A stretch of 63,879 nucleotides of DNA, counting the filler, from Octopus bimaculoides (taxonomy: Eukaryota): assembly GCF_001194135.2 (NCBI RefSeq). It is 3 parts of 3 records of this genome, joined end to end, with 100 filler letters (N's around TTAATTAATTAA, not from the genome) between each part and the next. Parts side by side here need not be neighbours in the genome. Positions count along the whole stretch, not along the records: positions 22,697 to 51,773 come from NC_068983.1; 2 more parts are not named here. One strand, 5' to 3'. Both the position numbers and the translations under genes were made by a program. Below are positions 25,134-51,152 of this stretch, in pieces. A model generated the notes under the pieces. It was not told the origin of the DNA and did not search any database. It saw only the letters and a list, made by a program, of their open reading frames with translations. Within the stretch, counting starts at the first letter, position 1. Each line of letters starts with the position of its first letter.

Positions 25134-26384
25134 AGGCATCAAATGAAATTGACTAACGCGTAAAATTTTTGCTAGAGATGCATTCCTGGTGGATCGTTGT
25201 GATACAGGTTGCGTTTCGGGTTGTTTAAAGAAGCCATTATGCTAATAATATTCTTAATAAATTACGGCGGCGAGTTGATAGAGACGTTAGTACGCGGGGC
25301 GAAATGCTTAGCAGTATTTTGTCTGTCTTTACGTCCTGAGCTCAAACTCCGCTGAACTCGACTTTGCCTTTCATCCCTTCAGGGTCGATGAATTAAGTAC
25401 AAGTTGCGTACTGAGGTCGATCTACACACAAAAAAAAGAAGAAAATTGGGCCTTTTGCCAGGAGCAGACAACATTATTCGTAATAAATTCACTATTGACT
25501 AAAATGCTACTGTTTGACATTCAGATTACCTTGATTTGTGAAAACAACGAAAATATATTTGACGATGAAAATTAGAATATTCTGCGCTCTGATTACTACA
25601 TTGTGAACGTGTCATGATTATTTACCTATAATACACACACACACACATACGCTCACACACACACACGCACACACACACACGCACACATACACACATATGT
25701 GTGTGTGTGTATTTCTTGCCACTTCAACATGGCTGTTCCGTACGAGACGACGTTACTGTTCTTTTTTAAGCCTATAAGAAAACCTTCTGTAGCTGGTTAA
25801 TGACACAACCTGTGTCCTATACATTACAAGTAGGGGAGCAAATCCCTGCCATCTAGTGATTTTACACTTTCAATAGACCAGCCTGCTTTCAATGTATTTT
25901 CCCTTCCTTAGTTTAGGATATCTGTCCGCTAGAGATAGGTGTCGTTCACCCTAACTCGCTATATATATATATATATATATATATATATNNNNNNNNNNNN
26001 NNNNNNNNNNNNNNNNNNNNNNNNNNNNNNNNNNNNNNNNNNNNNNNNNNNNNNNNNNNNNNNNNNNNNNNNNNNNNNNNNNNNNNNNNNNNNNNNNNNN
26101 NNNNNNNNNNNNNNNNNNNNNNNNNNNNNNNNNNNNNNNNNNNNNNNNNNNNNNNNNNNNNNNNNNNNNNNNNNNNNNNNNNNNNNNNNNNNNNNNNNNN
26201 NNNNNNNNNNNNNNNNNNNNNNNNNNNNNNNNNNNNNNNNNNNNNNNNNNNNNNNNNNNNNNNNNNNNNNNNNNNNNNNNNNNNNNNNNNNNNNNNNNNN
26301 NNNNNNNNNNNNNNNNNNNNNNNNNNNNNNNNNNNNNNNNNNNNNNNNNNNNNNNNNNNNNNNNNNNNNNNNNNNNNNNNNNNN

Positions 26385-26421
<37 letters not shown>

Positions 26422-26764
26422 AGTCATCCAATAAATAATGCGTTTGTTTATAATTCTATTCTTCTGAATTATGATAAACAAATTTCTTTTTAAATCTAAA
26501 ATATACTCTCCTTTCTCCTATCTAGTAGTTTTGCAGGAACCCTCTTAAAAAATTCACTTGCCCGGGTCGAAAATACTCCTCCGATATTGTTGTGACCTCG
26601 TCTAAAGAAATCATATTTTTCCCGTCCAACTGATTTTAAAGACTGCGGAATAAATGATAATTAGATGGGGCAATATCCGGCGAATAGTGTAGGTGGGACA
26701 TTGTTACTTTTTTTTGTTGATTCTAACTGTATTGGCTCTGTAAACTATATATATATATATGAAT

Positions 26765-26918
26765 AGCAGTGTGGTAAGAAGCTTACTTCCCAACCACGTG
26801 GTTCCGGGTACAGGCCCACTACGTGGCATCTTGGGCAAATGTCTTCTACTATAACTTCGTGCCAACCAAAACCTTTTGAGTGGATTTAGTAGACGTAAAC
26901 TGAAAGAAGCCCGTCGTA

Positions 26919-26949
<31 letters not shown>

Positions 26950-26979
26950 TTGTGTGTCTATCTATCTATCTATCTATTT
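26765..26979 (+). mobile_element. CORE-type SINE 5' half plus (TCTA)n, joined directly to the TLR fragment
   Basis: Homology to 2926-3336; the 3' half is missing. Confidence 0.8.
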
Positions 26980-27975
26980 GAGCACTACGATATTATTATT
27001 CCTGTTTTGTTAAATGAAATTCCGTCGAATTTACAAACGAAAAGGCTTGGGGTTTTACTAAAACAAAAAACATACCTCGAATGGCCAAATGAAATCGAAT
27101 ACGAAGATATGTTTTGGGAGCGTTTTGTAAGACGTCTGTGCGAAAGTGAAATCGATAATGAAATTTAGAACTAAATATAGAGAACTGTTTGGAAACGAGA
27201 CAAACATATACATACGCTTGCATTTAAATAGTGAAAATCACAGTAAGAAAACAAAACTGAGTTCATTATAAAATGATGTTGCTGCTTGGAGTAAAGGTGA
27301 ATTCTTGTATCCTCATGTGTAAGTGAAATTGTTCGAATTTCGATAAACAACATTGTGAATAGTTAAATATCTCGCGACAAATATGACATCTACGATTCAT
27401 CATATGAAAGCAATTCTAAATATGTTTCATTGCGAAACGAAAGTTAGTAGAACTAAAATCTGCCATGGCATACTGTTTCATTCTAAATAAGCAGCTAAAC
27501 GCAATTCTCTGTTTCAACATTATTGCTTGTGCATATCGTATTTTAAAAATAATTACCCTCCTCTGTTATTGTAAATTTTGTAGAAAAATAAAGATAAAAC
27601 AACACACACAGATGAAATATTATTAGTTTCAAAAACGTTTTGTAAATACTTGTAAACATACAGTTGACACTACAAAGGCAGAAAATGCAGAACTATAATA
27701 TTAATTAAATGTAGATTATAAAATTTTGACTTTTCATATAAAATTACTGTTCCAGAGAAATCTGGCAAATTTTGGCGAGTAAGTATTATGTGTCATTCCG
27801 TTATATTATTTTATTATATTTTTCTATTATATTTTAATGTTTCACTTCATCCTAGTGATACTAATAACCTGGTTTCAAAATGCGATAGAAGTTTGCTTTA
27901 CAGAAAAGCATTAAATATCTCAAACATGCCTTATGAATATGTAAAACAATACATCAATAAATCAATATGCATATA
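26980..27975 (+). pseudogene. 5'-truncated TLR paralog: last 62 codons of TIR plus about 800 bp of 3' UTR
   Basis: 26980-27168 encodes EHYDIIIPVLLNEIPSNLQ...WPNEIEYEDMFWERFVRRLCESEIDNEI*, colinear with 42020-42208. Homology continues through the 3' flank to about 27975 vs about 43020. The 5' side abuts a (TCTA)n tract of a SINE. Confidence 0.9.
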
Positions 27976-27976
27976 C

Positions 27977-28044
<68 letters not shown>

Positions 28045-28450: not shown

Positions 28451-29400
28451 AAACAAACTTTAACAAAGCACATACACAAATAACTATTCACACACAAAAT
28501 TCATTTTGCCAAAATCATTCTGCCACTTATGATGAACCGACACAAATAACAACCTAAAATTTTAGCCACTGGACTATATACAAAAGACTCCTGTCCACTC
28601 TCCCTCTAGACAAATTGAATTTGGAGTGCCATAATAATAAATAAGCATGTTCACTCAAATGTGTCAGACTTCTTTTTAGGCGTAAAATGTACTGATACTT
28701 GACACTAACGAACAAACGTAAGGGGAAACATACAAAATGTTATAAACTTCATTCTCTACAAACATATGAAAGCATTCACAGCATTGATTGTTTAGACATG
28801 AGCAGTCAACCGTGCCAGTCTTAGCTAAGGAAGCCAAACATTGTCATTGGATACTAACACACGGACGTAGCGAGGAACCTAAAAAATTTCTGAGACCAGT
28901 CATGTGACTATTCTCTACCAATAAAATCCTATTCAAAACATACACTAATTTGAGCCATGAGCTGCCAATCAAGATACGGCACGCTTGAAGCACTAGTCAG
29001 AAGCAAGAGAGCTACGACATAAAACACGTCTTTCTATTTGAACTTTTTGAAAATCAGTGTACAATGTGATATTAATAAACAAGGCGCAGGAGTTGGTGTG
29101 TGGTAAGTAGCTTGCATACCAACCACATGGTTCCGGTTCCGTCCCACTGCGTGGCACCCTGGGCAAGTGTCTTCTACTATAGCCTCGGGCCGACCAAACC
29201 CTTCTGAGTGGATTTGGTAGACGGAAACTGAAAGAAGCCCGTCGTATATATATATATATATATAATTAACATAATATGGTAAAAATTCGATATTAATTAA
29301 TATCAATTTAATACCAGGAAACTAGCACATTAGAAGAATCAGAAGGTTCACGAAGAAATTTTTTTCGAGATCCTAAAAAGATTATAGTACTTGTGTATAT

Positions 29401-29620: not shown

Positions 29621-30113
29621 NNNNNNNNNNNNNNNNNNNNNNNNNNNNNNNNNNNNNNNNNNNNNNNNNNNNNNNNNNNNNNNNNNNNNNNNNNNNNNNN
29701 NNNNNNNNNNNNNNNNNNNNNNNNNNNNNNNNNNNNNNNNNNNNNNNNNNNNNNNNNNNNNNNNNNNNNNNNNNNNNNNNNNNNNNNNNNNNNNNNNNNN
29801 NNNNNNNNNNNNNNNNNNNNNNNNNNNNNNNNNNNNNNNNNNNNNNNNNNNNNNNNGCTAGTGTGTTTACGTCCCCGTAACTTAGCGGTTCGACAAAGGA
29901 GACCGATAGAATAAGTACTAGGCTTACAAAGAATAAGTCCTGGGGTCAATTTTCTCGACCAAAGGCGGTGCTCCAGTATGGCCGCAGTCAAATGACAGAA
30001 ACAAGTAAAAGAGTAAAAGAGTAAAAGAGAATATTTAAAAAATGAATAACTATTCTCAGAGCATTTTCAACTTCTACATTTCCTATATTTCTACTGGTAT
30101 GGAATAAAATAAC

Positions 30114-30713: not shown

Positions 30714-31319
30714 NNNNNNNNNNNNNNNNNNNNNNNNNNNNNNNNNNNNNNNNNNNNNNNNNNNNNNNNNNNNNNNNNNNNNNNNNNNNNNNNNNNNNNN
30801 NNNNNNNNNNNNNNNNNNNNNNNNNNNNNNNNNNNNNNNNNNNNNNNNNNNNNNNNNNNNNNNNNNNNNNNNNNNNNNNNNNNNNNNNNNNNNNNNNNNN
30901 NNNNNNNNNNNNNNNNNNNNNNNNNNNNNNNNNNNNNNNNNNNNNNNNNNNNNNNNNNNNNNNNNNNNNNNNNNNNNNNNNNNNNNNNNNNNNNNNNNNN
31001 NNNNNNNNNNNNNNNNNNNNNNNNNNNNNNNNNNNNNNNNNNNNNNNNNNNNNNNNNNNNNNNNNNNNNNNNNNNNNNNNNNNNNNNNNNNNNNNNNNNN
31101 NNNNNNNNNNNNNNNNNNNNNNNNNNNNNNNNNNNNNNNNNNNNNNNNNNNNNNNNNNNNNNNNNNNNNATACGTTGTCTGCGTGTGTGTCCTCAATGGA
31201 CGCTCAAACCTCTAGATCAATCTGTACCATACATGGTGTGTATAAATTATTTGACCTTGGAAAGAATAATACGGTCTTGATTTATTTCTTTTATTAAAAA
31301 TAATATTGCATTATATATA

Positions 31320-32799: not shown

Positions 32800-34670
32800 A
32801 CTTTATAAACTGCTACCGAAGAAAAGTGCTGGGCTGTCACGGAAGGCCCCTGCTGCAAAGCGCAAGGCAGCTGCACGATTTAGAGAGTCTGATGAACAAC
32901 ATAATCAAAGGGTATCGTAAAACCAACCAGAATGTGCTATCAGTCTGATAGCACATTCGTACATGTAGAGTTTATCTCGAACCGGTAGCGCCTCCTAGTA
33001 ACATTGCTAGGCCAAGGAAATATAGAAATTATCCATGATAGTTCCCGACCGGAAAGACCTCCGGAACCGACTAGCCAGTTCGTTCTTGTCGGCGCCCACA
33101 GTCTCCTCGAGAAGGTTGTCGCACTTCCCCGCCACTAAGCCTTTATAAATTTCTAAAGCGGAATATTCACCGATCCCATCAGGCGACTGGTTGAGGGCTA
33201 TGATCGCCTGGCGACATTCTAGGGGCCAGTCACCCAGTCTCGGTCTTTTCTGCACCCAAGACTGACACTCCGTCAAGGAGACGAGGTGCGGAAAGACAGG
33301 TCTCACAAATAGAGCCCAGACACGCTCACCGTCCAGAAATCGTTACCGATCGCGTAACCTAAGTGTGTGTCTGCGCATTAGGAGCCAGGGCATACCTAAT
33401 CCGCCACTCAGAGGATGCTGGAGACAGACCGACGGCCTGACCATTGGAACGCGTACCATCCACAAAAATTTAACTGAGAGACGCTCCAACCAAGGCACGA
33501 CAGCCAGGCAATAAATGATAACGGAGGCGATATAAGCATTCGCCACCTCTGTCCGACCTTTCAGGGACAGCGTATTCTCAGCCCATTTCTGTGTAAGTCT
33601 GGTCACCCTGTTCACCACCTCATCGCAATTCTTATGAACCTGGAGGTCCGGACTAAACCAGACCCAGAACAGTTTAACTGGTCCGTCGGTCGAGCATCCA
33701 ACGACGCCGTGCGATGGCATCGTCCTGCCTCTCCAAGAGCTGAACCGCGAACCCACTGATTTGTCGGCGTCGTTGATTTTAGCCCCTGCAACCGACTCAT
33801 ATTCGTTTAAGATGGTGCCGACCGTCTCCGCTTCGAAGGCGTCCGACACCATGACGGTGAGGGCGTCCGCGTATGCCGACACTGTCCTTCCCTGTCCCAG
33901 TTCGAAAGGGATGCCTTTTAGCTGTTCCATCTTCCGCAGCAGCGGATCGAGTGTTAATATGCACCGAAGAAGAGACAGCGGACAGCCCTGACGGACGGAG
34001 CGTGCGATGCCAAACGGCCCCGAGAGGTGGCCGTTTACTTTGACCACTGAATAAGGGCTGCTAAGTATTGCAGAGATCCAGCTGCTGAAAACGGGTCAGA
34101 AACCGTCTGCTTACATGGCGGCTCCCAAGTAGCGATGTCGACCTTATCGAATACTTCTGATTAATCCAAATTCATCAGAGCACTCAGGAAGCCAGCTTTG
34201 GCCCCAGCCCTCTCTATGATGGAGGTTGTTGTGGATAAATCTGCTCGGGATTTCGCACGTTTACGCTTCTCCGACCAGGCTATTGACGACAAACGGCAGC
34301 CTTTTTGGCAACACCTTGGCCAAAATACTAAACTCTGCGTTTAGCAGAGTTATGGGCAGAAAATTCTCCAGTACGTCCCCATTGACGGCGTTCTTCCTCA
34401 GCAGTATCACCTCTGTTAACAGCACTAGGAAATCTCCCGTTCTGTTGCAGTTGCGTTAGGCGTCTGTCAAGAGGTCGCCAAAAAAATCTGGCCTGAATAC
34501 ATAGAATTCATAGGGCAGACCATCCAAACCGGGCGATCTGCAACTTGTGCAATTGTTCATCGCCTCCCCAATTTCAGCGGCTGTTATCGGCCTTTCAGAT
34601 AACTTCGTGTCAGCTGCTGAGTGTCGCAGCAAGCCGTCCAAGTACGAACTAAATTCCAGATGAGCACCGA
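32800..34670 (-). mobile_element. 5'-truncated L1/Tx1-clade non-LTR retrotransposon (RT remnant)
   Basis: SPGLDGLPYEFY (34456-34641), a PITLLN..ILAK motif near 34300-34400, VRQGCPLS and YAD motifs (33343-34047); multiple stops and frameshifts. 3' boundary approximate. Confidence 0.88.
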
Positions 34671-36210: not shown

Positions 36211-36821
36211 TCTTCAATGTGAATTAATACTGTTGACGGAAACTGTGAGGCGTCTGTCGCGTATAATATATTCATACATTCATACGTAATACATTTATAC
36301 ACACACACACACACACACATACACATATATATATGCATATANNNNNNNNNNNNNNNNNNNNNNNNNNNNNNNNNNNNNNNNNNNNNNNNNNNNNNNNNNN
36401 NNNNNNNNNNNNNNNNNNNNNNNNNNNNNNNNNNNNNNNNNNNNNNNNNNNNNNNNNNNNNNNNNNNNNNNNNNNNNNNNNNNNNNNNNNNNNNNNNNNN
36501 NNNNNNNNNNNNNNNNNNNNNNNNNNNNNNNNNNNNNNNNNNNNNNNNNNNNNNNNNNNNNNNNNNNNNNNNNNNNNNNNNNNNNNNNNNNNNNNNNNNN
36601 NNNNNNNNNNNNNNNNNNNNNNNNNNNNNNNNNNNNNNNNNNNNNNNNNNNNNNNNNNNNNNNNNNNNNNNNNNNNNNNNNNNNNNNNNNNNNNNNNNNN
36701 NNNNNNNNNNNNNNNNNNNNNNNNNNNNNNNNNNNNNNNNNNNNNNNNNNNNNNNNNNNNNNNNNNNNNNNNNNNNNNNNNNNNNNNNNNNNNNNNNNNN
36801 NNNNNNNNNNNNNNNNNNNNN

Positions 36822-37534: not shown

Positions 37535-38419
37535 GTATATATATATANNNNNNNNNNNNNNNNNNNNNNNNNNNNNNNNNNNNNNNNNNNNNNNNNNNNN
37601 NNNNNNNNNNNNNNNNNNNNNNNNNNNNNNNNNNNNNNNNNNNNNNNNNNNNNNNNNNNNNNNNNNNNNNNNNNNNNNNNNNNNNNNNNNNNNNNNNNNN
37701 NNNNNNNNNNNNNNNNNNNNNNNNNNNNNNNNNNNNNNNNNNNNNNNNNNNNNNNNNNNNNNNNNNNNNNNNNNNNNNNNNNNNNNNNNNNNNNNNNNNN
37801 NNNNNNNNNNNNNNNNNNNNNNNNNNNNNNNNNNNNNNNNNNNNNNNNNNNNNNNNNNNNNNNNNNNNNNNNNNNNNNNNNNNNNNNNNNNNNNNNNNNN
37901 NNNNNNNNNNNNNNNNNNNNNNNNNNNNNNNNNNNNNNNNNNNNNNNNNNNNNNNNNNNNNNNNNNNNNNNNNNNNNNNNNNNNNNNNNNNNNNNNNNNN
38001 NNNNNNNNNNNNNNNNNNNNNNNNNNNNNNNNNNNNNNNNNNNNNNNNNNNNNNNNNNNNNNNNNNNNNNNNNNNNNNNNNNNNNNNNNNNNNNNNNNNN
38101 NNNNNNNNNNNNNNNNNNNNNNNNNNNNNNNNNNNNNNNNNNNNNNNNNNNNNNNNNNNNNNNNNNNNNNNNNNNNNNNNNNNNNNNNNNNNNNNNNNNN
38201 NNNNNNNNNNNNNNNNNNNNNNNNNNNNNNNNNNNNNNNNNNNNNNNNNNNNNNNNNNNNNNNNNNNNNNNNNNNNNNNNNNNNNNNNNNNNNNNNNNNN
38301 NNNNNNNNNNNNNNNNNNNNNNNNNNNNNNNNNNTATATATATATATATATATATATATGAAAAGCAACAACGAAAATGCTACTTTTTAAAATTTCGGTA
38401 CATTTGAATTTCATTATAT

Positions 38420-39307: not shown

Positions 39308-40144
39308 GTGTGCCTGTGAGTGCGTGTGTATAAATATATAATTGCCAGCAAGGATGCAGTATTTCGTTTTGTAGCCGTAATATATTTCCTAGTGTAATAA
39401 AATTTGTGTCAATATGATGCCTTGTTTTGGTGATAAGCTTTTCTCTACAGACTTTCAATAGTATTCACAAATAGCATTGACATTTCTGAAATGTCATATA
39501 CGAAAGCATTTACGTAAGTGAAACGATCGACGGTTGAAGATTAGGTAATTGGTGTACATGCATATTTCAAGAGTTGCGGCTCTTTTGTCATCATGGGATC
39601 CAACACTCTCAAAAGGCAGAGTTTGAAGCAAATTTTATGAGGTCACAACGGGTGGAGATCTTGCGTTTAAGTGTATACCTCTTCCCAAAGACAACTTACT
39701 ATACCTTTCATCATTCTTGTGTCTGAAAATCAAGTGCCAGACAAATGTAGGTGCGGGTCGATGTAATTGATTATATTCTACTGAGATTATTAACCTTGTG
39801 TGCCTGTCAACATTCTTCATTATCAATAGATTTGGAAAAATAGATTATACATTCTTCCTTCTAGATCTAGAGCAAGAATCATATTTCTGACTTTAAAATT
39901 TAACATATTATATACTAAATATTGTCGCTCATAGGATTCACTGATATATGTTTATTACATGCTTTTTTGTCCGAATGTGGTTTAGCTTTAGTGTTTTGTA
40001 ATATAAATTCTTTCGTAATCTTAAATGTAGTGTCTCGTTTGAACTATTTCAGATATAGATGACATGCTGACGACCTGAAATATATAAAACAAAATGAAGC
40101 TTTGTACATCAACCCATTCAAAGTCGTAACTAAATTCCTGCACA

Positions 40145-42148
40145 ATGAATTCCTTGACTCTAAGCGTACTCTTCCTGATTATTCATGTTTCATGTGGTGA
40201 AGCGGAAGAATGTCACGTTTTAAGAAAGGGGAGTTGGTCATGTGAAGGAAGCACTTTTGTTCCAAAATTTCCGCCTGACACTATAGCTGTAACATTCACA
40301 GATCTAAACATTGACAATTTGGACAATGAAACCTTTCAAAATTTGACAGAACTGCCCTTACTAGAACATTTGTTAATTAGGTCTACCTTCCTTAAGACAT
40401 CTACTAATGATGTATTTACGTATTTGAAGTATATACAAGAATTCGTACTTATTAATGTTCAGTTACTTCTTCCGGAATTAAGAAATATGCTGTTTGGTTT
40501 ACCACTGACTACAAAAAAATTAGTATTAGCTGAAATGCAACTGGAAAATTTGAATAAAGATATATTTGATGGTCTCAGAGGAACTAACGTCTCAAATATT
40601 TTCATCAATGAATGTAATATGGTACATTTTGATGGCAGCTATTTCAATGGTATAGATAGATTAGATCAACTTGTTCTTTCAGGAGACGGTATTACCTCAG
40701 TTACCAGTTGGGGATATCTTCCTAATTTGACTTATCTAGATTTCTATTATAATGAAATTTCAAATATGCCAAAATTTAAAAACGGGTCTGGATTTATATT
40801 TTACCCAAAACTTGAAAAGTTATTCATAGGTTTATCATTTTATGATCAATTAAACAGCAACTTTTTCATAGGACTAGAGCACCTACAGACTTTGGGAATC
40901 TATGTTGGTGATAACTTTTTTTTAAAATCGAACGTTTTTCAGGAATTGAAATGTCTACGAGCACTAAGTTTACTATCTCATAAGCACCATATCTTAAGAT
41001 TTGAGCAAAACATCTTCAAACTCAAATTATTGGAATCGGTGGAGCTAAATAACATTCATGTGGTTATTAACGAAGGCAAACCGTCTGCGATATTTAAGTC
41101 ATGTCCACAACTAACAAATTTGATTCTGAAAAATGTCAGTAACATATACCCCAACGATTTACTGAAGCCATTGACTAAACTAGAAAATCTGATGATTACT
41201 GACGGGCAGTTTAGTAAAGTTCCAGATGCGATTTGTAATATGAATAATCTTACAGAACTTTCCATTTGTTATACAAATGTTAGAAAATGGAACAAACCGA
41301 ATTGCTCAGTTATGAGAGTATTGCAGAAACTTGAGTTAAAGCACAATAAAATTCGGTACGTTAATCAAGAATTATTTTCCCATTTACTATTCAGCAACGA
41401 GAAACTGAATATTGATCTCTCAAACAACCCGTTCGTTTGCGACTGCAAAGCACTCTGGTTTCGAGACTGGTCACGGGAAAATGCAGGTAGATTGAAGAAT
41501 TACAGAAATTATCGGTGCTTCATTCCGGATACATTTCACCATATTTCTTTGGAAAATTTTTCTCTAAACTGGGATTACTGTGAAAATAGAAAGAAAACGT
41601 CTTTTATCGCTATATTTGGGGGAATTATAGCCGTACTGGTTGTCATTTTTGTATTTTTCGCAATATTATCATATGAAAAACAATGGTCTATTGGTTTCTG
41701 TTTATACCACTCATTAGTAAGAAAGAGAAAATACAAAACACTCGTTAATGAAGTCCAATATAAGCATGATGCTCTTGTATGTTACTGTAGTGCTGATGTC
41801 AACTGGGTTGTGAATAAATTGTTACCCATTATCGAAGAAGAAAACCATTTCAGTTTATGTTTACATGAGAGGGACGTTGTAGTTGGAAACGATACTGTTG
41901 ATAATATCGTAGACAGCATGCAACAAAGCCGTAAGGTTGTTTTAGTTTTGTCAAATGATTTTTCTCAGAGTAGCTGGTGCCAGTTTGAAGCAAGTATTGC
42001 CCAGCAAAAAATTTTAAAAGATCATTACGATATTATTATTCCTGTTTTGTTAAATGAAATTCCGTCGAATTTACGAACGGAAAGTCTTGTTGATTTAATG
42101 AATCAAAAAACGTTCTTGAAATGGCCGAATGAAAGTAAATACGAATAA
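40145..42148 (+). CDS. Toll-like receptor, single-exon CDS, single-cysteine-cluster type; TIR ends prematurely at TAA 42146-42148
   Basis: 667-aa ORF: hydrophobic signal peptide (MNSLTLSVLFLIIHVSCG), about 15 LRR-like repeats, LRR-CT (NNPFVCDCKALWF...C...C), TM helix (FIAIFGGIIAVLVVIFVFFAILSY), TIR with box1 (HDALVCY) and box2 (CLHERDVVVG...SRKVVLVLS...WCQFE). Box3 FW lies after the stop codon. Confidence 0.95.
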   Translation: MNSLTLSVLFLIIHVSCGEAEECHVLRKGSWSCEGSTFVPKFPPDTIAVTFTDLNIDNLDNETFQNLTELPLLEHLLIRSTFLKTSTNDVFTYLKYIQEFVLINVQLLLPELRNMLFGLPLTTKKLVLAEMQLENLNKDIFDGLRGTNVSNIFINECNMVHFDGSYFNGIDRLDQLVLSGDGITSVTSWGYLPNLTYLDFYYNEISNMPKFKNGSGFIFYPKLEKLFIGLSFYDQLNSNFFIGLEHLQTLGIYVGDNFFLKSNVFQELKCLRALSLLSHKHHILRFEQNIFKLKLLESVELNNIHVVINEGKPSAIFKSCPQLTNLILKNVSNIYPNDLLKPLTKLENLMITDGQFSKVPDAICNMNNLTELSICYTNVRKWNKPNCSVMRVLQKLELKHNKIRYVNQELFSHLLFSNEKLNIDLSNNPFVCDCKALWFRDWSRENAGRLKNYRNYRCFIPDTFHHISLENFSLNWDYCENRKKTSFIAIFGGIIAVLVVIFVFFAILSYEKQWSIGFCLYHSLVRKRKYKTLVNEVQYKHDALVCYCSADVNWVVNKLLPIIEEENHFSLCLHERDVVVGNDTVDNIVDSMQQSRKVVLVLSNDFSQSSWCQFEASIAQQKILKDHYDIIIPVLLNEIPSNLRTESLVDLMNQKTFLKWPNESKYE

Positions 42149-43124
42149 ATATTTTGGGAGCAATTTATAAGACAGCTGAACGAAAATGAAACCGATAATG
42201 AGGTTTAGAACTGAAGTGTAATGACTTCATTCGAAAAGAGACAAACAAATGCATCAGCACACATTCAAATAGAGAAAAGCTCGGAAAGAAAACAAAACTG
42301 AATATATTTTATTTAGATGTTGTTATGAGAAAAGATGAATTCATGTATCAACACCTAACAGTCAAGTTAGTCCTCGGTTAAACTGCTCAAATTCCGATGA
42401 ACAGCATTGTAAATGCTTAGATATCTAGTGACAAATGTGACAGCAACGTTTGATTCTATGAAAGCAATTCTAAATATATTTCATGACAAAACGAAAGTTA
42501 ATAAGACTATAATCTCTTATGGCATACAGTTTCGTATTAGTGAGTATCTACACACGATTCCAAAGTCACTATTTGAATAAACAGTAGTGCATGTGCATGT
42601 ATTTTTGAAATATTTATCCATCACTGTGTTGTAAAATTTGTATAAAAATAATAAAACGACACACACATATGAAATATCATTATTTTCAAAAATGTTTTAT
42701 AATTCCTTGTAAACATACAATACACGCTACTACAATAACAAATGCAGAAATATAATACTAATTAAATGTAGATTATCAAATTATACTTTTTTATATATAA
42801 TTACAGTTCCAGGTAATTTTGGTAAATTTTCGCTTGCGGATAACATATATATAGTTTTATTATATTATTCTATTATATATTAATATTTCACTTCAACATA
42901 CAGATACTATTAACCTGGTTTTAGAACACAATAAACGTATGCTTTAGAGAAAAGCGTTAAATATGTGTGAAAATTGTATCTTGAATTTGTAAACCAATAA
43001 ATGAATAAATCAATATATATACATATATATATATATATACGAGTGTGTGTCTCTTCTATGAATATGTATATGTGTGTGCATGTGTTCGTGTGCGTATATG
43101 TATACACGTTTATACACGTATGTA

Positions 43125-49963: not shown

Positions 49964-50087
49964 ATCGCAGGAGTGGTAATGTTTCAAAAGTTCGCTTTGC
50001 AACTATATGGTTGCGAGTTCAGCTCCGTTGGGCGAGGCCTAGGACAAGAATCTTCCAGTAGAGACCAAAACGAACGAACTNNNNNNN
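49110..50087 (+). other. Conserved non-coding block copy 2 (paralog of 35530-36210)
   Basis: Colinear similarity, e.g. gttgatattttgcttcctatatcg, cggtaagtgaaac, tttcacgttgatccagacc, agtagagacca. Ends at an N-gap. Confidence 0.8.
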
Positions 50088-50512
50088 NNNNNNNNNNNNN
50101 NNNNNNNNNNNNNNNNNNNNNNNNNNNNNNNNNNNNNNNNNNNNNNNNNNNNNNNNNNNNNNNNNNNNNNNNNNNNNNNNNNNNNNNNNNNNNNNNNNNN
50201 NNNNNNNNNNNNNNNNNNNNNNNNNNNNNNNNNNNNNNNNNNNNNNNNNNNNNNNNNNNNNNNNNNNNNNNNNNNNNNNNNNNNNNNNNNNNNNNNNNNN
50301 NNNNNNNNNNNNNNNNNNNNNNNNNNNNNNNNNNNNNNNNNNNNNNNNNNNNNNNNNNNNNNNNNNNNNNNNNNNNNNNNNNNNNNNNNNNNNNNNNNNN
50401 NNNNNNTATATATAGAAAATTGATTAAGAGTGTTAATCGTTTTTTTTTTCAGTCTGCGGAGAAATGGCTAAAATTTGCCGTTTATAATTATACCATATGT
50501 TACGAACACATA

Positions 50513-50610
50513 CGCACACAGGCGCACGCACACAGGCGCACGCACACAGGCGCACGCACACAGGCGCACGCACACAGGCGCACGCACACAGGCGCACGCA
50601 CACAGACGCA
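50513..50610. repeat. 14-bp minisatellite x7
   Basis: (CGCACACAGGCGCA)6 plus one variant unit. Confidence 0.92.
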
Positions 50611-51152
50611 CACACACATACGTTTATATACTTTCATTTGTTTCAGTGATTTGTCTGTAGCCATACTGGAGCACCACCTCTTAGTCGAAGAAATTGAATC
50701 CTGGACTTATGCTTTGTAAGCCTGGTGCATATTTTACAGGGTTGCTTATGCCGAATCGCTAGGTTACCGGGGCAAAAACACACAAATATAGGTTGTGAAG
50801 CGATGCCAGGGTGGAGCACAGACACAAAATGGACAAAAGCCTTTCGGCTATACAACAAAAGGAAAATAATTTGACCATTACAACAAAAATAAAACAAAAT
50901 AAACAGGGTTTTACGACTATCAAATAGTGTAGTAAGCTAGCGCAAGAAAAAAGAAAATGGAAAAATCTTAACTGAGCGGGTGGCGAGACAGAACAGAACA
51001 GATGCAACTGGCCTCAAAGGCAGTCAGCCGGAACAGGACGAAAATCCCTAAACGAGACAGTAATAACGTGACAGAGGGACTAGTGGACACGAGTGGACAA
51101 AGAAATCAGAGGGACCAAATTTCGAGAGAGGGGTCACAGAATGTGATGGAGA

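What the first reader, a model, noticed from the sequence alone, without database searches (positions are those of the whole stretch)
42122..42208. TLR TIR domain cut by an in-frame TAA right before box 3, with the conserved tail still in frame
Seen: the frame reads WPNESKYE-TAA-IFWEQFIRQLNENETDNEV-TAG. The paralog at 26980-27168 reads WPNEIEYE-D-MFWERFVRRLCESEIDNEI-TAG, with its stop at the same position, so the TAA is derived and removes the FW box-3 helix. Established: box 3 and helix E are part of the TIR fold. Inference: this is either (i) a recent null allele or assembly error, (ii) a ligand-binding but signalling-impaired decoy receptor, or (iii) a receptor restored at RNA level. UAA needs two A-to-I edits to read as UGG (Trp), which is conceivable in a coleoid with heavy recoding. 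The UAA-A context is not a classic readthrough context, and I see no obvious pairing partner for ADAR.
Basis: partly seen in the sequence, partly recalled or inferred. Interest (0 to 1): 0.7.

Follow-up and report, generated by a model that had tools for sequence, protein, structure and literature searches.

The report
Recent nonsense mutation truncating an octopus TLR
One of two neighbouring Toll-like receptor genes in the Octopus bimaculoides genome carries a recent single-base stop codon that removes the last helix of its signalling domain, so it is most likely a newly disabled immune-receptor copy and not an RNA-edited or read-through gene.

Summary
Window 40145-42148 (+) is a single-exon Toll-like receptor ORF of 667 codons. 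It ends at TAA 42146-42148, and the frame stays open for 19 more codons to TAG 42206-42208. The piece is Octopus bimaculoides chromosome CM046603.1. Seven intact relatives are 2064 nt long and colinear without indels: the paralogue 16 kb downstream, the O. vulgaris and O. sinensis orthologues, and four further copies. All carry a sense codon at this position. Both orthologues have GAA, so the stop arose by one G>T change at 42146.

An AlphaFold model of the orthologue puts helix alphaE at residues 664-679, so the stop at 668 removes 12 of its 16 residues, including the box-3 Phe-Trp. In human TLR2, whose TIR domain is among the closest solved structures, deleting the equivalent 15 C-terminal residues abolishes NF-kB signalling.

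Substitution patterns on this lineage (omega about 0.5) match the intact orthologue, and there is no second lesion, so the stop is recent. RNA rescue is unsupported: UAA needs two edits, editing cannot restore Glu after G>T, the codon is predicted unpaired, and the stop is species-specific. This is ordinary gene birth-and-death in a tandem immune-gene cluster.

The parts
40145..42148 (+). Truncated TLR open reading frame of 667 codons plus TAA. It has a signal peptide (aa 1-20), an LRR ectodomain, an LRRCT motif (aa 428-442) and a transmembrane segment (aa 486-510, nt 41600-41674). The TIR domain is retained from about aa 541 to aa 667.
   Evidence: It is identical to the protein held in NCBI, UniRef and eukprot as a 667-aa product.
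42146..42148 (+). Premature TAA stop. It derives from GAA (Glu668) by a G>T change at 42146, which corresponds to about CM046603.1:48,181,896.
42149..42208 (+). Former coding tail: 19 codons (IFWEQFIRQLNENETDNEV) plus the ancestral TAG. It encodes most of helix alphaE, including the box-3 F670 and W671.
   Evidence: Ten of its 19 positions are invariant across the 8 family members.
41765..42145 (+). The retained part of the TIR domain, from betaA to betaE plus the first turn of alphaE. Box 1 is DALVCY (aa 542-547). Box 2 / the BB loop is RDVVVG, with Val in place of the canonical Pro.
   Evidence: Pfam, PDB alignments to the TLR1, TLR2 and TLR6 TIR domains, and the AlphaFold2 secondary structure of the orthologue.
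40895..41269 (+). Gene-conversion tract shared with the neighbouring paralogue P0002. Identity is 95-98% in sliding windows starting at CDS nt 826-976, against 82-91% elsewhere.
   Evidence: Sliding identity. NJ bootstrap groups A_Obi with B_Obi in 500/500 replicates for CDS nt 751-1125, against 0/500 for nt 1126-2064.
26980..27994 (+). Relic of a third TLR copy, holding the last 62 codons plus about 830 bp of 3' flank. A SINE-like repeat (26758-26973) and a (CTAT)n run lie immediately 5' of it.
42112..42161 (+). Weak predicted RNA hairpin of 12 bp, 5 of them G-U. Its 26-nt loop contains the UAA.
   Evidence: z=-2.24 and 7 of 200 shuffles fold as well. In the 601-nt context z=-0.84.

Best explanation
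A real, evolutionarily recent nonsense substitution (GAA>TAA, G>T at 42146) hit the first gene of a small tandem cluster of fast-evolving, single-exon Toll-like receptor genes in Octopus bimaculoides.

The stop lies in the only coding exon, 57 nt before the ancestral stop. I therefore infer that the mRNA escapes exon-junction-dependent decay and that a 667-residue receptor is made. That receptor would have an intact ectodomain, transmembrane helix and TIR betaA-betaE, but would lack three of the four turns of helix alphaE, including the box-3 Phe-Trp.

Helix alphaE packs on the TIR core. It also forms part of the 'EE surface' used in head-to-tail TIR assembly. I therefore predict that the product cannot signal, making this a null or strongly hypomorphic allele and a nascent pseudogene that may still be polymorphic. 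Any dominant-negative effect on partner receptors would be incidental. The relic at 26980 and the copy-number differences between species show that this cluster evolves by gene birth and death.

Shown here: the stop, its derived state, what it removes, and the lack of other decay. Inferred: translation of the truncated product, its loss of signalling, and its population status.
For: - The stop and the open tail are in the sequence.
- The window maps to O. bimaculoides CM046603.1. An intact 687-aa paralogue lies 16 kb downstream.
- Seven relatives are colinear at 2064 nt with a sense codon at this position. Both orthologues have GAA.
- Orthology of the 3' half, including the TIR domain, has 500/500 bootstrap support. 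The locus is colinear with the O. vulgaris locus over 4.4 kb at 85% identity.
- The AlphaFold2 model of the orthologue places alphaE at 664-679, so the stop at 668 removes 12 of its 16 residues.
- The closest solved TIR domains are TLR6, TLR1 and TLR2 (E about 1e-24 to 5e-25). The stop aligns two residues before their FW motif.
- Deleting the C-terminal 15 residues of human TLR2, the last conserved block, abolishes NF-kB activation (PMC2212382).
- AlphaE belongs to the EE surface of the intrastrand TIR interface, and MyD88 W284A and R288A are signalling-dead (PMC8110528).
- Recency: branch counts in the cleanly orthologous 3' part are 29N:15S on this lineage and 26N:13S on the orthologue lineage, omega about 0.5 for both. 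The whole-gene branch is 87N:46S, below neutrality at p=3e-4.
- There is no second stop and no indel in 2 kb. Under neutrality this bounds the time since the stop to under about 0.008-0.017 substitutions per site. Each lineage's dS is about 0.11, half of the pairwise 0.22.
Against: - No reads, population data or RNA or protein data were available. Fixation, heterozygosity and expression are therefore unknown, and a consensus error cannot be formally excluded.
- The same lack of decay would also be seen if the truncated gene were kept by selection.
- The loss-of-signalling prediction is transferred from human TLR2 and MyD88 and was not tested on this protein.
- The whole octopus family already has Val in place of the BB-loop Pro, so its signalling mode may differ from that of TLR2.
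- Gene conversion in the 5' half confounds the whole-gene branch counts.
Confidence: 0.75

Rival explanations
1. The truncated receptor is a selected decoy or negative regulator. It binds ligand or pairs with the neighbouring TLR through its intact ectodomain and transmembrane helix, but cannot nucleate adaptor assembly, and so damps signalling.
For: The 667-codon ORF is fully intact, with omega about 0.5 and no further lesions. A last-exon stop should allow the protein to be made (inference). Gene conversion keeps part of its ectodomain 97-98% identical to the neighbour, so the two could share ligands or dimerise.
Against: The same pattern is expected from a very recent null mutation. The stop is confined to one species and one assembly. 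There is no sign of a change in selective regime after the stop, and the data have no power to detect one (tail: 2N:1S). In the O. vulgaris and O. sinensis loci fetched, every full-length copy is intact and no truncated TIR was seen.
Confidence: 0.12
2. The TAA is a consensus or assembly error, or the minor haplotype of a heterozygous site, and the animal actually carries an intact 687-codon gene.
For: The assembly is a gapped draft, with six N-gaps in this 29-kb piece. Only one assembly of this species was available. A single-base difference is all that separates the sequence from an intact gene.
Against: The gene and its flanks contain no gaps and align cleanly to the orthologous locus over 4.4 kb. 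Single-base consensus errors are rare compared with genuine loss-of-function variants in tandem immune-gene families (my own knowledge). The same 667-aa product is carried by several databases, though all derive from the same assembly.
Confidence: 0.08
3. The full-length TIR domain is restored at the RNA or translation level. This would happen either by double A-to-I editing (UAA>UGG, Trp) or by programmed stop-codon read-through.
For: Coleoids edit mRNA heavily, and stop-loss editing is recognised in their transcriptomes (PMC8382921). The tail is still open and 14/19 identical to the orthologue's tail. A weak local hairpin exists, z=-2.24.
Against: - The stop-loss events described are UAG>UGG, a single edit. 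UAA would need two edits on the same molecule.
- The genomic change was G>T, so editing cannot be 'restorative' in the sense of PMC6881472. That paper also notes that high editing is so far confined to neural tissue.
- The UAA lies in a 26-nt loop. The stem is only 12 bp with 5 G-U pairs, the 601-nt fold has z=-0.84, and no inverted-repeat partner exists within 39900-43100.
- UAA followed by A is among the most efficient termination contexts (my own knowledge).
- The stop is absent from the orthologues, so there is no conserved stop with a conserved extension.
- An open 19-codon tail is expected by chance with p about 0.22.
Confidence: 0.03

Closest known systems
Human TLR2 C-terminal deletion mutant lacking the last 15 residues (Kirschning et al. 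1998, PMC2212382)
   Same: The cut falls at nearly the same place in a homologous TIR domain. TLR2-del15 ends 4 residues before the FW motif, and the octopus protein ends 2 residues before it. Both remove the last conserved block (box 3 / alphaE) and leave the ectodomain, transmembrane helix and the rest of the TIR domain.
   Different: The TLR2 mutant is an engineered construct that has been tested and is signalling-dead. The octopus allele is natural and untested. The octopus family also has Val in place of the BB-loop Pro and an extra acidic tail of about 8 residues after alphaE.
Natural TLR loss-of-function alleles and pseudogenes in vertebrates, such as the human TLR5 392STOP allele and TLR pseudogenes that differ between lineages (recalled from my own knowledge)
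   Same: A single nonsense change in an otherwise intact innate-immune receptor that belongs to a family with redundant members, arising within a lineage through gene birth and death.
   Different: TLR5 392STOP truncates the ectodomain. Here the cut is inside the TIR domain, 20 residues from the end. The population frequency is unknown.
TIR-less or TIR-defective decoy receptors, such as RP105/CD180, SIGIRR and IL-1R2 (recalled from my own knowledge)
   Same: They pair a ligand-binding or partner-binding ectodomain with a signalling-incompetent cytoplasmic part.
   Different: Those receptors are conserved and selected, with dedicated architectures. This one is a one-species point truncation with no evidence of selection for the truncated state.
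Coleoid stop-loss A-to-I recoding sites (UAG>UGG; PMC8382921)
   Same: An in-frame stop in a coleoid coding region with an open frame beyond it.
   Different: The codon is UAA, which needs two edits. It is predicted to be unpaired, the gene is an immune gene and not a neural one, and the stop arose by G>T and is not conserved.

Membership tests
Toll-like receptor (single cysteine-cluster / V-type architecture) | N-terminal signal peptide and an LRR ectodomain with a C-terminal cysteine cluster (LRRCT) | tested here: met
   The N-terminus is hydrophobic (MNSLTLSVLFLIIHVSCG). Pfam LRR_8 matches. The AlphaFold2 model shows a repeated beta-strand solenoid over residues 23-470. The motif NPFVCDCKALWF lies at aa 428-442.
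Toll-like receptor (single cysteine-cluster / V-type architecture) | A single transmembrane helix between the ectodomain and the TIR domain | tested here: met
   A hydrophobic stretch spans aa 486-510. The orthologue model has a helix at 487-511.
Toll-like receptor (single cysteine-cluster / V-type architecture) | A complete cytoplasmic TIR domain (betaA-alphaE; boxes 1, 2 and 3) | tested here: not met
   The Pfam TIR match only reaches profile position 163/179 when the post-stop tail is included. The ORF ends at residue 667, inside alphaE (664-679), so box-3 F670 and W671 are not encoded. Boxes 1 and 2 are present, but box 2 has Val in place of Pro.
Pseudogene (unitary or duplicated, non-processed) | A disabling mutation relative to intact orthologues and paralogues | tested here: met
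   GAA>TAA at codon 668. All seven relatives are intact at this position.
Pseudogene (unitary or duplicated, non-processed) | Relaxed constraint (omega near 1, accumulation of further lesions) | tested here: not met
   Omega is about 0.5 on this branch, the same as on the orthologue's branch. There is no second stop or indel. Either the event is recent or the gene is still constrained.
Pseudogene (unitary or duplicated, non-processed) | Loss of expression or function | not testable with these tools
   No RNA-seq or protein data were available. No transcript-derived fragments of this protein or of its intact neighbour are in the protein collection; each cluster holds one member.
A-to-I stop-loss recoding site | A stop codon convertible to Trp by editing, with the edited adenosine(s) inside a double-stranded RNA structure | tested here: not met
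   UAA needs two edits, whereas the described events are UAG>UGG. The UAA is in a predicted 26-nt loop. The stem is 12 bp with 5 G-U pairs. z=-2.24 for 201 nt and -0.84 for 601 nt. No inverted repeat involves the site.
A-to-I stop-loss recoding site | A>G mismatches between RNA and DNA at the site | not testable with these tools
   No transcriptome reads were available. The Liscovitch-Brauer 2017 site lists are not held.
Programmed translational read-through gene | A leaky stop context, and a stop codon conserved across species with a conserved coding extension | tested here: not met
   The context is UAA-A, a strong terminator (my own knowledge). The stop is absent from O. vulgaris, O. sinensis and all paralogues.

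The most novel reading that the evidence does not exclude
The truncated receptor, which lacks alphaE, is expressed and retained as a natural dominant-negative partner of the neighbouring intact TLR, with ectodomain identity maintained by gene conversion. An even less likely version is that it is conditionally restored to full length by double A-to-I editing of UAA to UGG in high-ADAR tissues, which would give an RNA-level on/off switch for an innate immune receptor.
Probability: 0.1. Interest if true: 0.65.

Novelty: new member of a known kind. Interest (0 to 1): 0.2.

Why it matters
The main value is for annotation and for counts of immune-gene repertoires. O. bimaculoides has been credited with nine TLRs (PMC8609888). 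Databases carry this one as an ordinary 667-aa protein, yet it lacks the last TIR helix and probably cannot signal.

It also gives a clean natural example of how TLR clusters in cephalopods turn over. Within about 35 kb there is a relic, a freshly truncated copy and an intact copy, with gene conversion between the neighbours. If the allele proved to be fixed and expressed, it would be a ready-made natural test of how far TIR signalling in a lophotrochozoan depends on alphaE and box 3. As it stands, the finding is ordinary.

Tried and rejected
- **Transcript evidence.** The protein collection holds no transcript-derived fragments of this protein or of its intact neighbour; each cluster has one member, from the genome. 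This says nothing about expression.
- **Published editing-site lists.** I tried to read the O. bimaculoides lists in Liscovitch-Brauer et al. 2017. The paper is not held under its DOI or PMC id.
- **Literature search.** A full-text search for TLR2 C-terminal deletion papers found nothing. The answer came from reading PMC2212382 directly.
- **Mini-intron removing the stop.** I considered one running from GTAAAT at 42135 to an AG at 42159-42160. I rejected it because it would be 26 nt, too short and not a multiple of 3 (read).
- **The new AATAAA hexamer.** The G>T change creates AATAAA at 42144-42149. Three other AATAAA hexamers sit inside the coding sequence of most copies, so the hexamer alone means nothing.
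- **Rfam.** A scan of the piece at gathering thresholds found nothing.
- **Relaxed selection.** The branch test showed no relaxation. The first whole-gene counts are confounded by gene conversion, so I repeated them on the cleanly orthologous 3' partition.
- **Failed runs.** A Biopython bootstrap timed out and was replaced by a custom NJ bootstrap. An unfiltered blastn of the flanks was swamped by microsatellite hits.
Full report
**1. What is in the sequence**

The frame at 42122-42208 reads WPNESKYE-TAA-IFWEQFIRQLNENETDNEV-TAG, exactly as reported. TAA is at 42146-42148 and TAG at 42206-42208.

The TAA ends a 667-codon ORF that starts at ATG 40145. The ORF encodes a complete-looking type-I receptor:
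- a hydrophobic signal peptide;
- a leucine-rich-repeat ectodomain (Pfam LRR_8);
- a C-terminal cysteine cluster, NPFVCDCKALWF, at aa 428-442;
- a transmembrane stretch at aa 486-510;
- a TIR domain (Pfam PF01582, E=7e-18).

The TIR match runs on through the stop into the tail when the stop is masked.

**2. Where the sequence comes from, and its relatives**

The exact 667-aa product sits on Octopus bimaculoides chromosome CM046603.1 (GCA_001194135.2) at about 48.18 Mb. NCBI, UniRef and eukprot carry it as a protein.

An intact 687-aa paralogue (P0002, named 'toll-like receptor 13' by NCBI) lies 16 kb downstream on the same strand. O. vulgaris and O. sinensis have tandem arrays of the same family. 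The first gene of each array is P0003 in O. vulgaris and P0045 in O. sinensis.

Eight coding sequences (this gene, two orthologues and five other copies) are all 2064 nt and align without a single indel. Only this gene has an internal stop.

**3. The stop is derived by one substitution**

At the stop position the two orthologues and one further copy have GAA. Four copies have GGA and the relic has GAT. The window reads TAC GAA TAA ATA TTT against the orthologues' TAT GAA GAA AAG TTT. This is a G>T transversion at 42146.

Orthology of the 3' half, including the TIR domain, is firm. NJ bootstrap gives 500/500 for nt 1126-2064. The locus is colinear with the O. vulgaris locus over 4.4 kb, flanks included, at 85% identity.

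The 5' half tells a different story. It groups with the O. bimaculoides neighbour in 421/500 replicates for nt 1-750 and 500/500 for nt 751-1125. Sliding windows starting at CDS nt 826-976 are 95-98% identical to the neighbour. This indicates gene conversion between the two neighbours.

**4. What the stop removes**

The closest solved structures are the TIR domains of TLR6, TLR1, TLR2 and TLR10. The stop aligns to the Gly of TLR1 '...KSKRG-LFWANLRAAINI', two residues before the box-3 FW.

An AlphaFold2 model of the O. vulgaris orthologue has mean pLDDT 82, with block means of 64-86 over the ordered TIR region (residues 541-680). It gives:
- betaA 541-546 and alphaA 549-566;
- betaB 571-573 and alphaB 584-593;
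- betaC 595-602 and alphaC 604-626;
- betaD 631-635 and alphaD 646-652;
- a short betaE at 658-659;
- alphaE 664-679.

The product therefore ends after the first turn of alphaE. It loses 12 of 16 helical residues, including F670 and W671, plus the acidic tail. Ten of the 19 tail positions are invariant across the eight family members, so the tail is constrained in intact copies.

**5. Expected consequence**

[quoted passage not shown] 1998, PMC2212382). That cut is within two residues of the octopus one.

In the MyD88 and MAL TIR assemblies, alphaE together with betaD and betaE forms the 'EE surface'. This surface receives the BB loop of the next subunit. The alphaE mutants W284A and R288A abolish signalling (Clabbers et al. 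2021, PMC8110528).

I therefore infer that the 667-aa protein cannot nucleate adaptor assembly and may be destabilised. The stop is in the only coding exon, 57 nt before the old stop, so exon-junction-dependent mRNA decay is not expected. The truncated protein is probably made. This is inference, and no expression data were available.

**6. How old is the stop?**

In the cleanly orthologous 3' partition (nt 1126-2001), parsimony assigns 29 non-synonymous and 15 synonymous changes to this lineage. The orthologue's lineage has 26 and 13. Omega is about 0.5 for both, with Fisher p=1.0.

Over the whole gene the branch has 87N:46S. That is below the neutral expectation at p=3e-4, and it does not differ from the orthologue's branch, p=0.56. 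Pairwise omega across the family is 0.45-0.6.

About 5.4% of possible point changes in the ORF would create a stop. With indels included, the absence of any second lesion limits neutral evolution since the stop to under about 0.008-0.017 substitutions per site at the 95% level. Each lineage's dS is about 0.11, half of the pairwise 0.22.

So the stop is recent, at most roughly a tenth of the time since the split from the O. vulgaris lineage, or else the truncated gene is still under selection. The data cannot separate these two. Parsimony and the family's history favour the first.

**7. RNA-level rescue is unsupported**

- The change was G>T. A-to-I editing cannot restore Glu and could only give Trp, after editing both adenosines of UAA.
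- The stop-loss events handled in coleoid editome work are UAG>UGG (PMC8382921).
- The 'restorative' editing model concerns G>A substitutions, and high editing is so far confined to neural tissue (PMC6881472).
- The UAA lies in the 26-nt loop of a 12-bp hairpin with five G-U pairs. For the 201-nt fold z=-2.24, with 7 of 200 shuffles as stable. In a 601-nt context z=-0.84.
- No inverted-repeat partner for the site exists between 39900 and 43100.
- UAA followed by A is a strong termination context (my own knowledge).
- The stop is not conserved in the sister species, unlike genuine read-through or recoding sites.
- An open 19-codon tail has a chance probability of about 0.22 at this composition. 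It is simply what a recent stop leaves behind.

**8.

The segment 26980-27168 is the coding end of a roughly 1-kb relic, 26980-27994. The relic matches 42020-43039 at 75% identity: the last 62 codons plus the 3' flank. A SINE-like repeat (26758-26973) and a (CTAT)n run lie immediately 5' of it. No other TLR-like sequence occurs in the piece.

Its coding part is slightly closer to the B/D-type copies (163/189 nt) than to this gene (155/189), while its 3' flank is A-type. It is evidence of an earlier gene death in the same cluster.

**9. Comparison with what is known, and verdict**

The gene works like, and is built like, a TLR1/2/6/10-type Toll-like receptor. It fails one defining feature of the family, a complete TIR domain. 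Its closest analogue is the engineered TLR2 deletion lacking the last 15 residues.

It fits the known pattern of lineage-specific TLR loss-of-function alleles in redundant tandem families. A selected decoy role (about 0.12), an assembly error or heterozygous site (about 0.08) and RNA-level rescue (about 0.03) remain as rivals. The decisive data are read pile-ups, population genotypes and RNA-seq at 42146-42148.

Novelty is low: this is a new member of a known kind. Interest is about 0.2.

Noticed in passing
window 40895-41269 (CDS nt 751-1125), compared with L001 10751-11125: A gene-conversion tract links this TLR and its neighbour 16 kb downstream. Sliding windows starting at CDS nt 826-976 are 95-98% identical, and bootstrap groups the two O. 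bimaculoides genes in 500/500 replicates here. The TIR half instead groups with the orthologues in 500/500 replicates.
   Followed up: yes
window 26980-27994, with 26758-26973 upstream: A roughly 1-kb relic of a third TLR copy holds the last 62 codons plus 3' flank, about 75% identical to the live gene. A SINE-like repeat and a (CTAT)n run lie immediately 5' of it. The same repeat family recurs at 29083-29264 and several times in the O. vulgaris locus L003.
   Followed up: partly
window 41882-41884 (Val580), and all family members in alignment A1: Every member of this octopus TLR cluster has Val where TLR1, TLR2 and TLR6 and most distant homologues have the BB-loop Pro: RDxxVG instead of RDxxPG. 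This is the position of the classic TLR4 Pro712His signalling-dead mutation (my own knowledge). The family may use a non-canonical adaptor interface.
   Followed up: partly
L003, L004, L005, L006 (O. vulgaris and O. sinensis clusters): Copy number differs between species. O. sinensis has four tandem full-length copies, and O. bimaculoides has two plus a relic. The recent B, C and D duplicates show pairwise dN/dS of 0.76-1.24, against 0.45-0.6 elsewhere. This suggests relaxed or diversifying selection after duplication.
   Followed up: no
window 42144-42149: The G>T change that makes the stop also creates a canonical AATAAA hexamer. Three other AATAAA hexamers sit inside the CDS of most copies, so it is probably meaningless. 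3'-end mapping would settle this.
   Followed up: partly
window 25989-26384, 29621-29856, 30714-31169, 36342-36821, 37548-38334, 50081-50406: The 29-kb piece has six assembly gaps (runs of N). Those inspected are flanked by (TA)n or (CA)n microsatellites. They generate spurious long 'ORFs' of X in all frames. None lies in or next to the TLR gene.
   Followed up: yes
window 33343-34047 (-): A 234-aa ORF gives a weak reverse-transcriptase match (Pfam RVT_1, E=2.3e-6, just below the gathering score). It is probably a LINE fragment.
   Followed up: partly
L002 5700-22004 and L001 1-22064: A gene model with an 87-aa product spans more than 38 kb across both TLR genes on the same strand. It may reflect upstream non-coding exons of the neighbour's transcript isoforms, or an annotation artefact.
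   Followed up: no
window 50512-50618: A tandem array of a 14-nt unit (ACGCACACAGGCGC) has 7.6 copies at 97% match. It lies next to an assembly gap.
   Followed up: no
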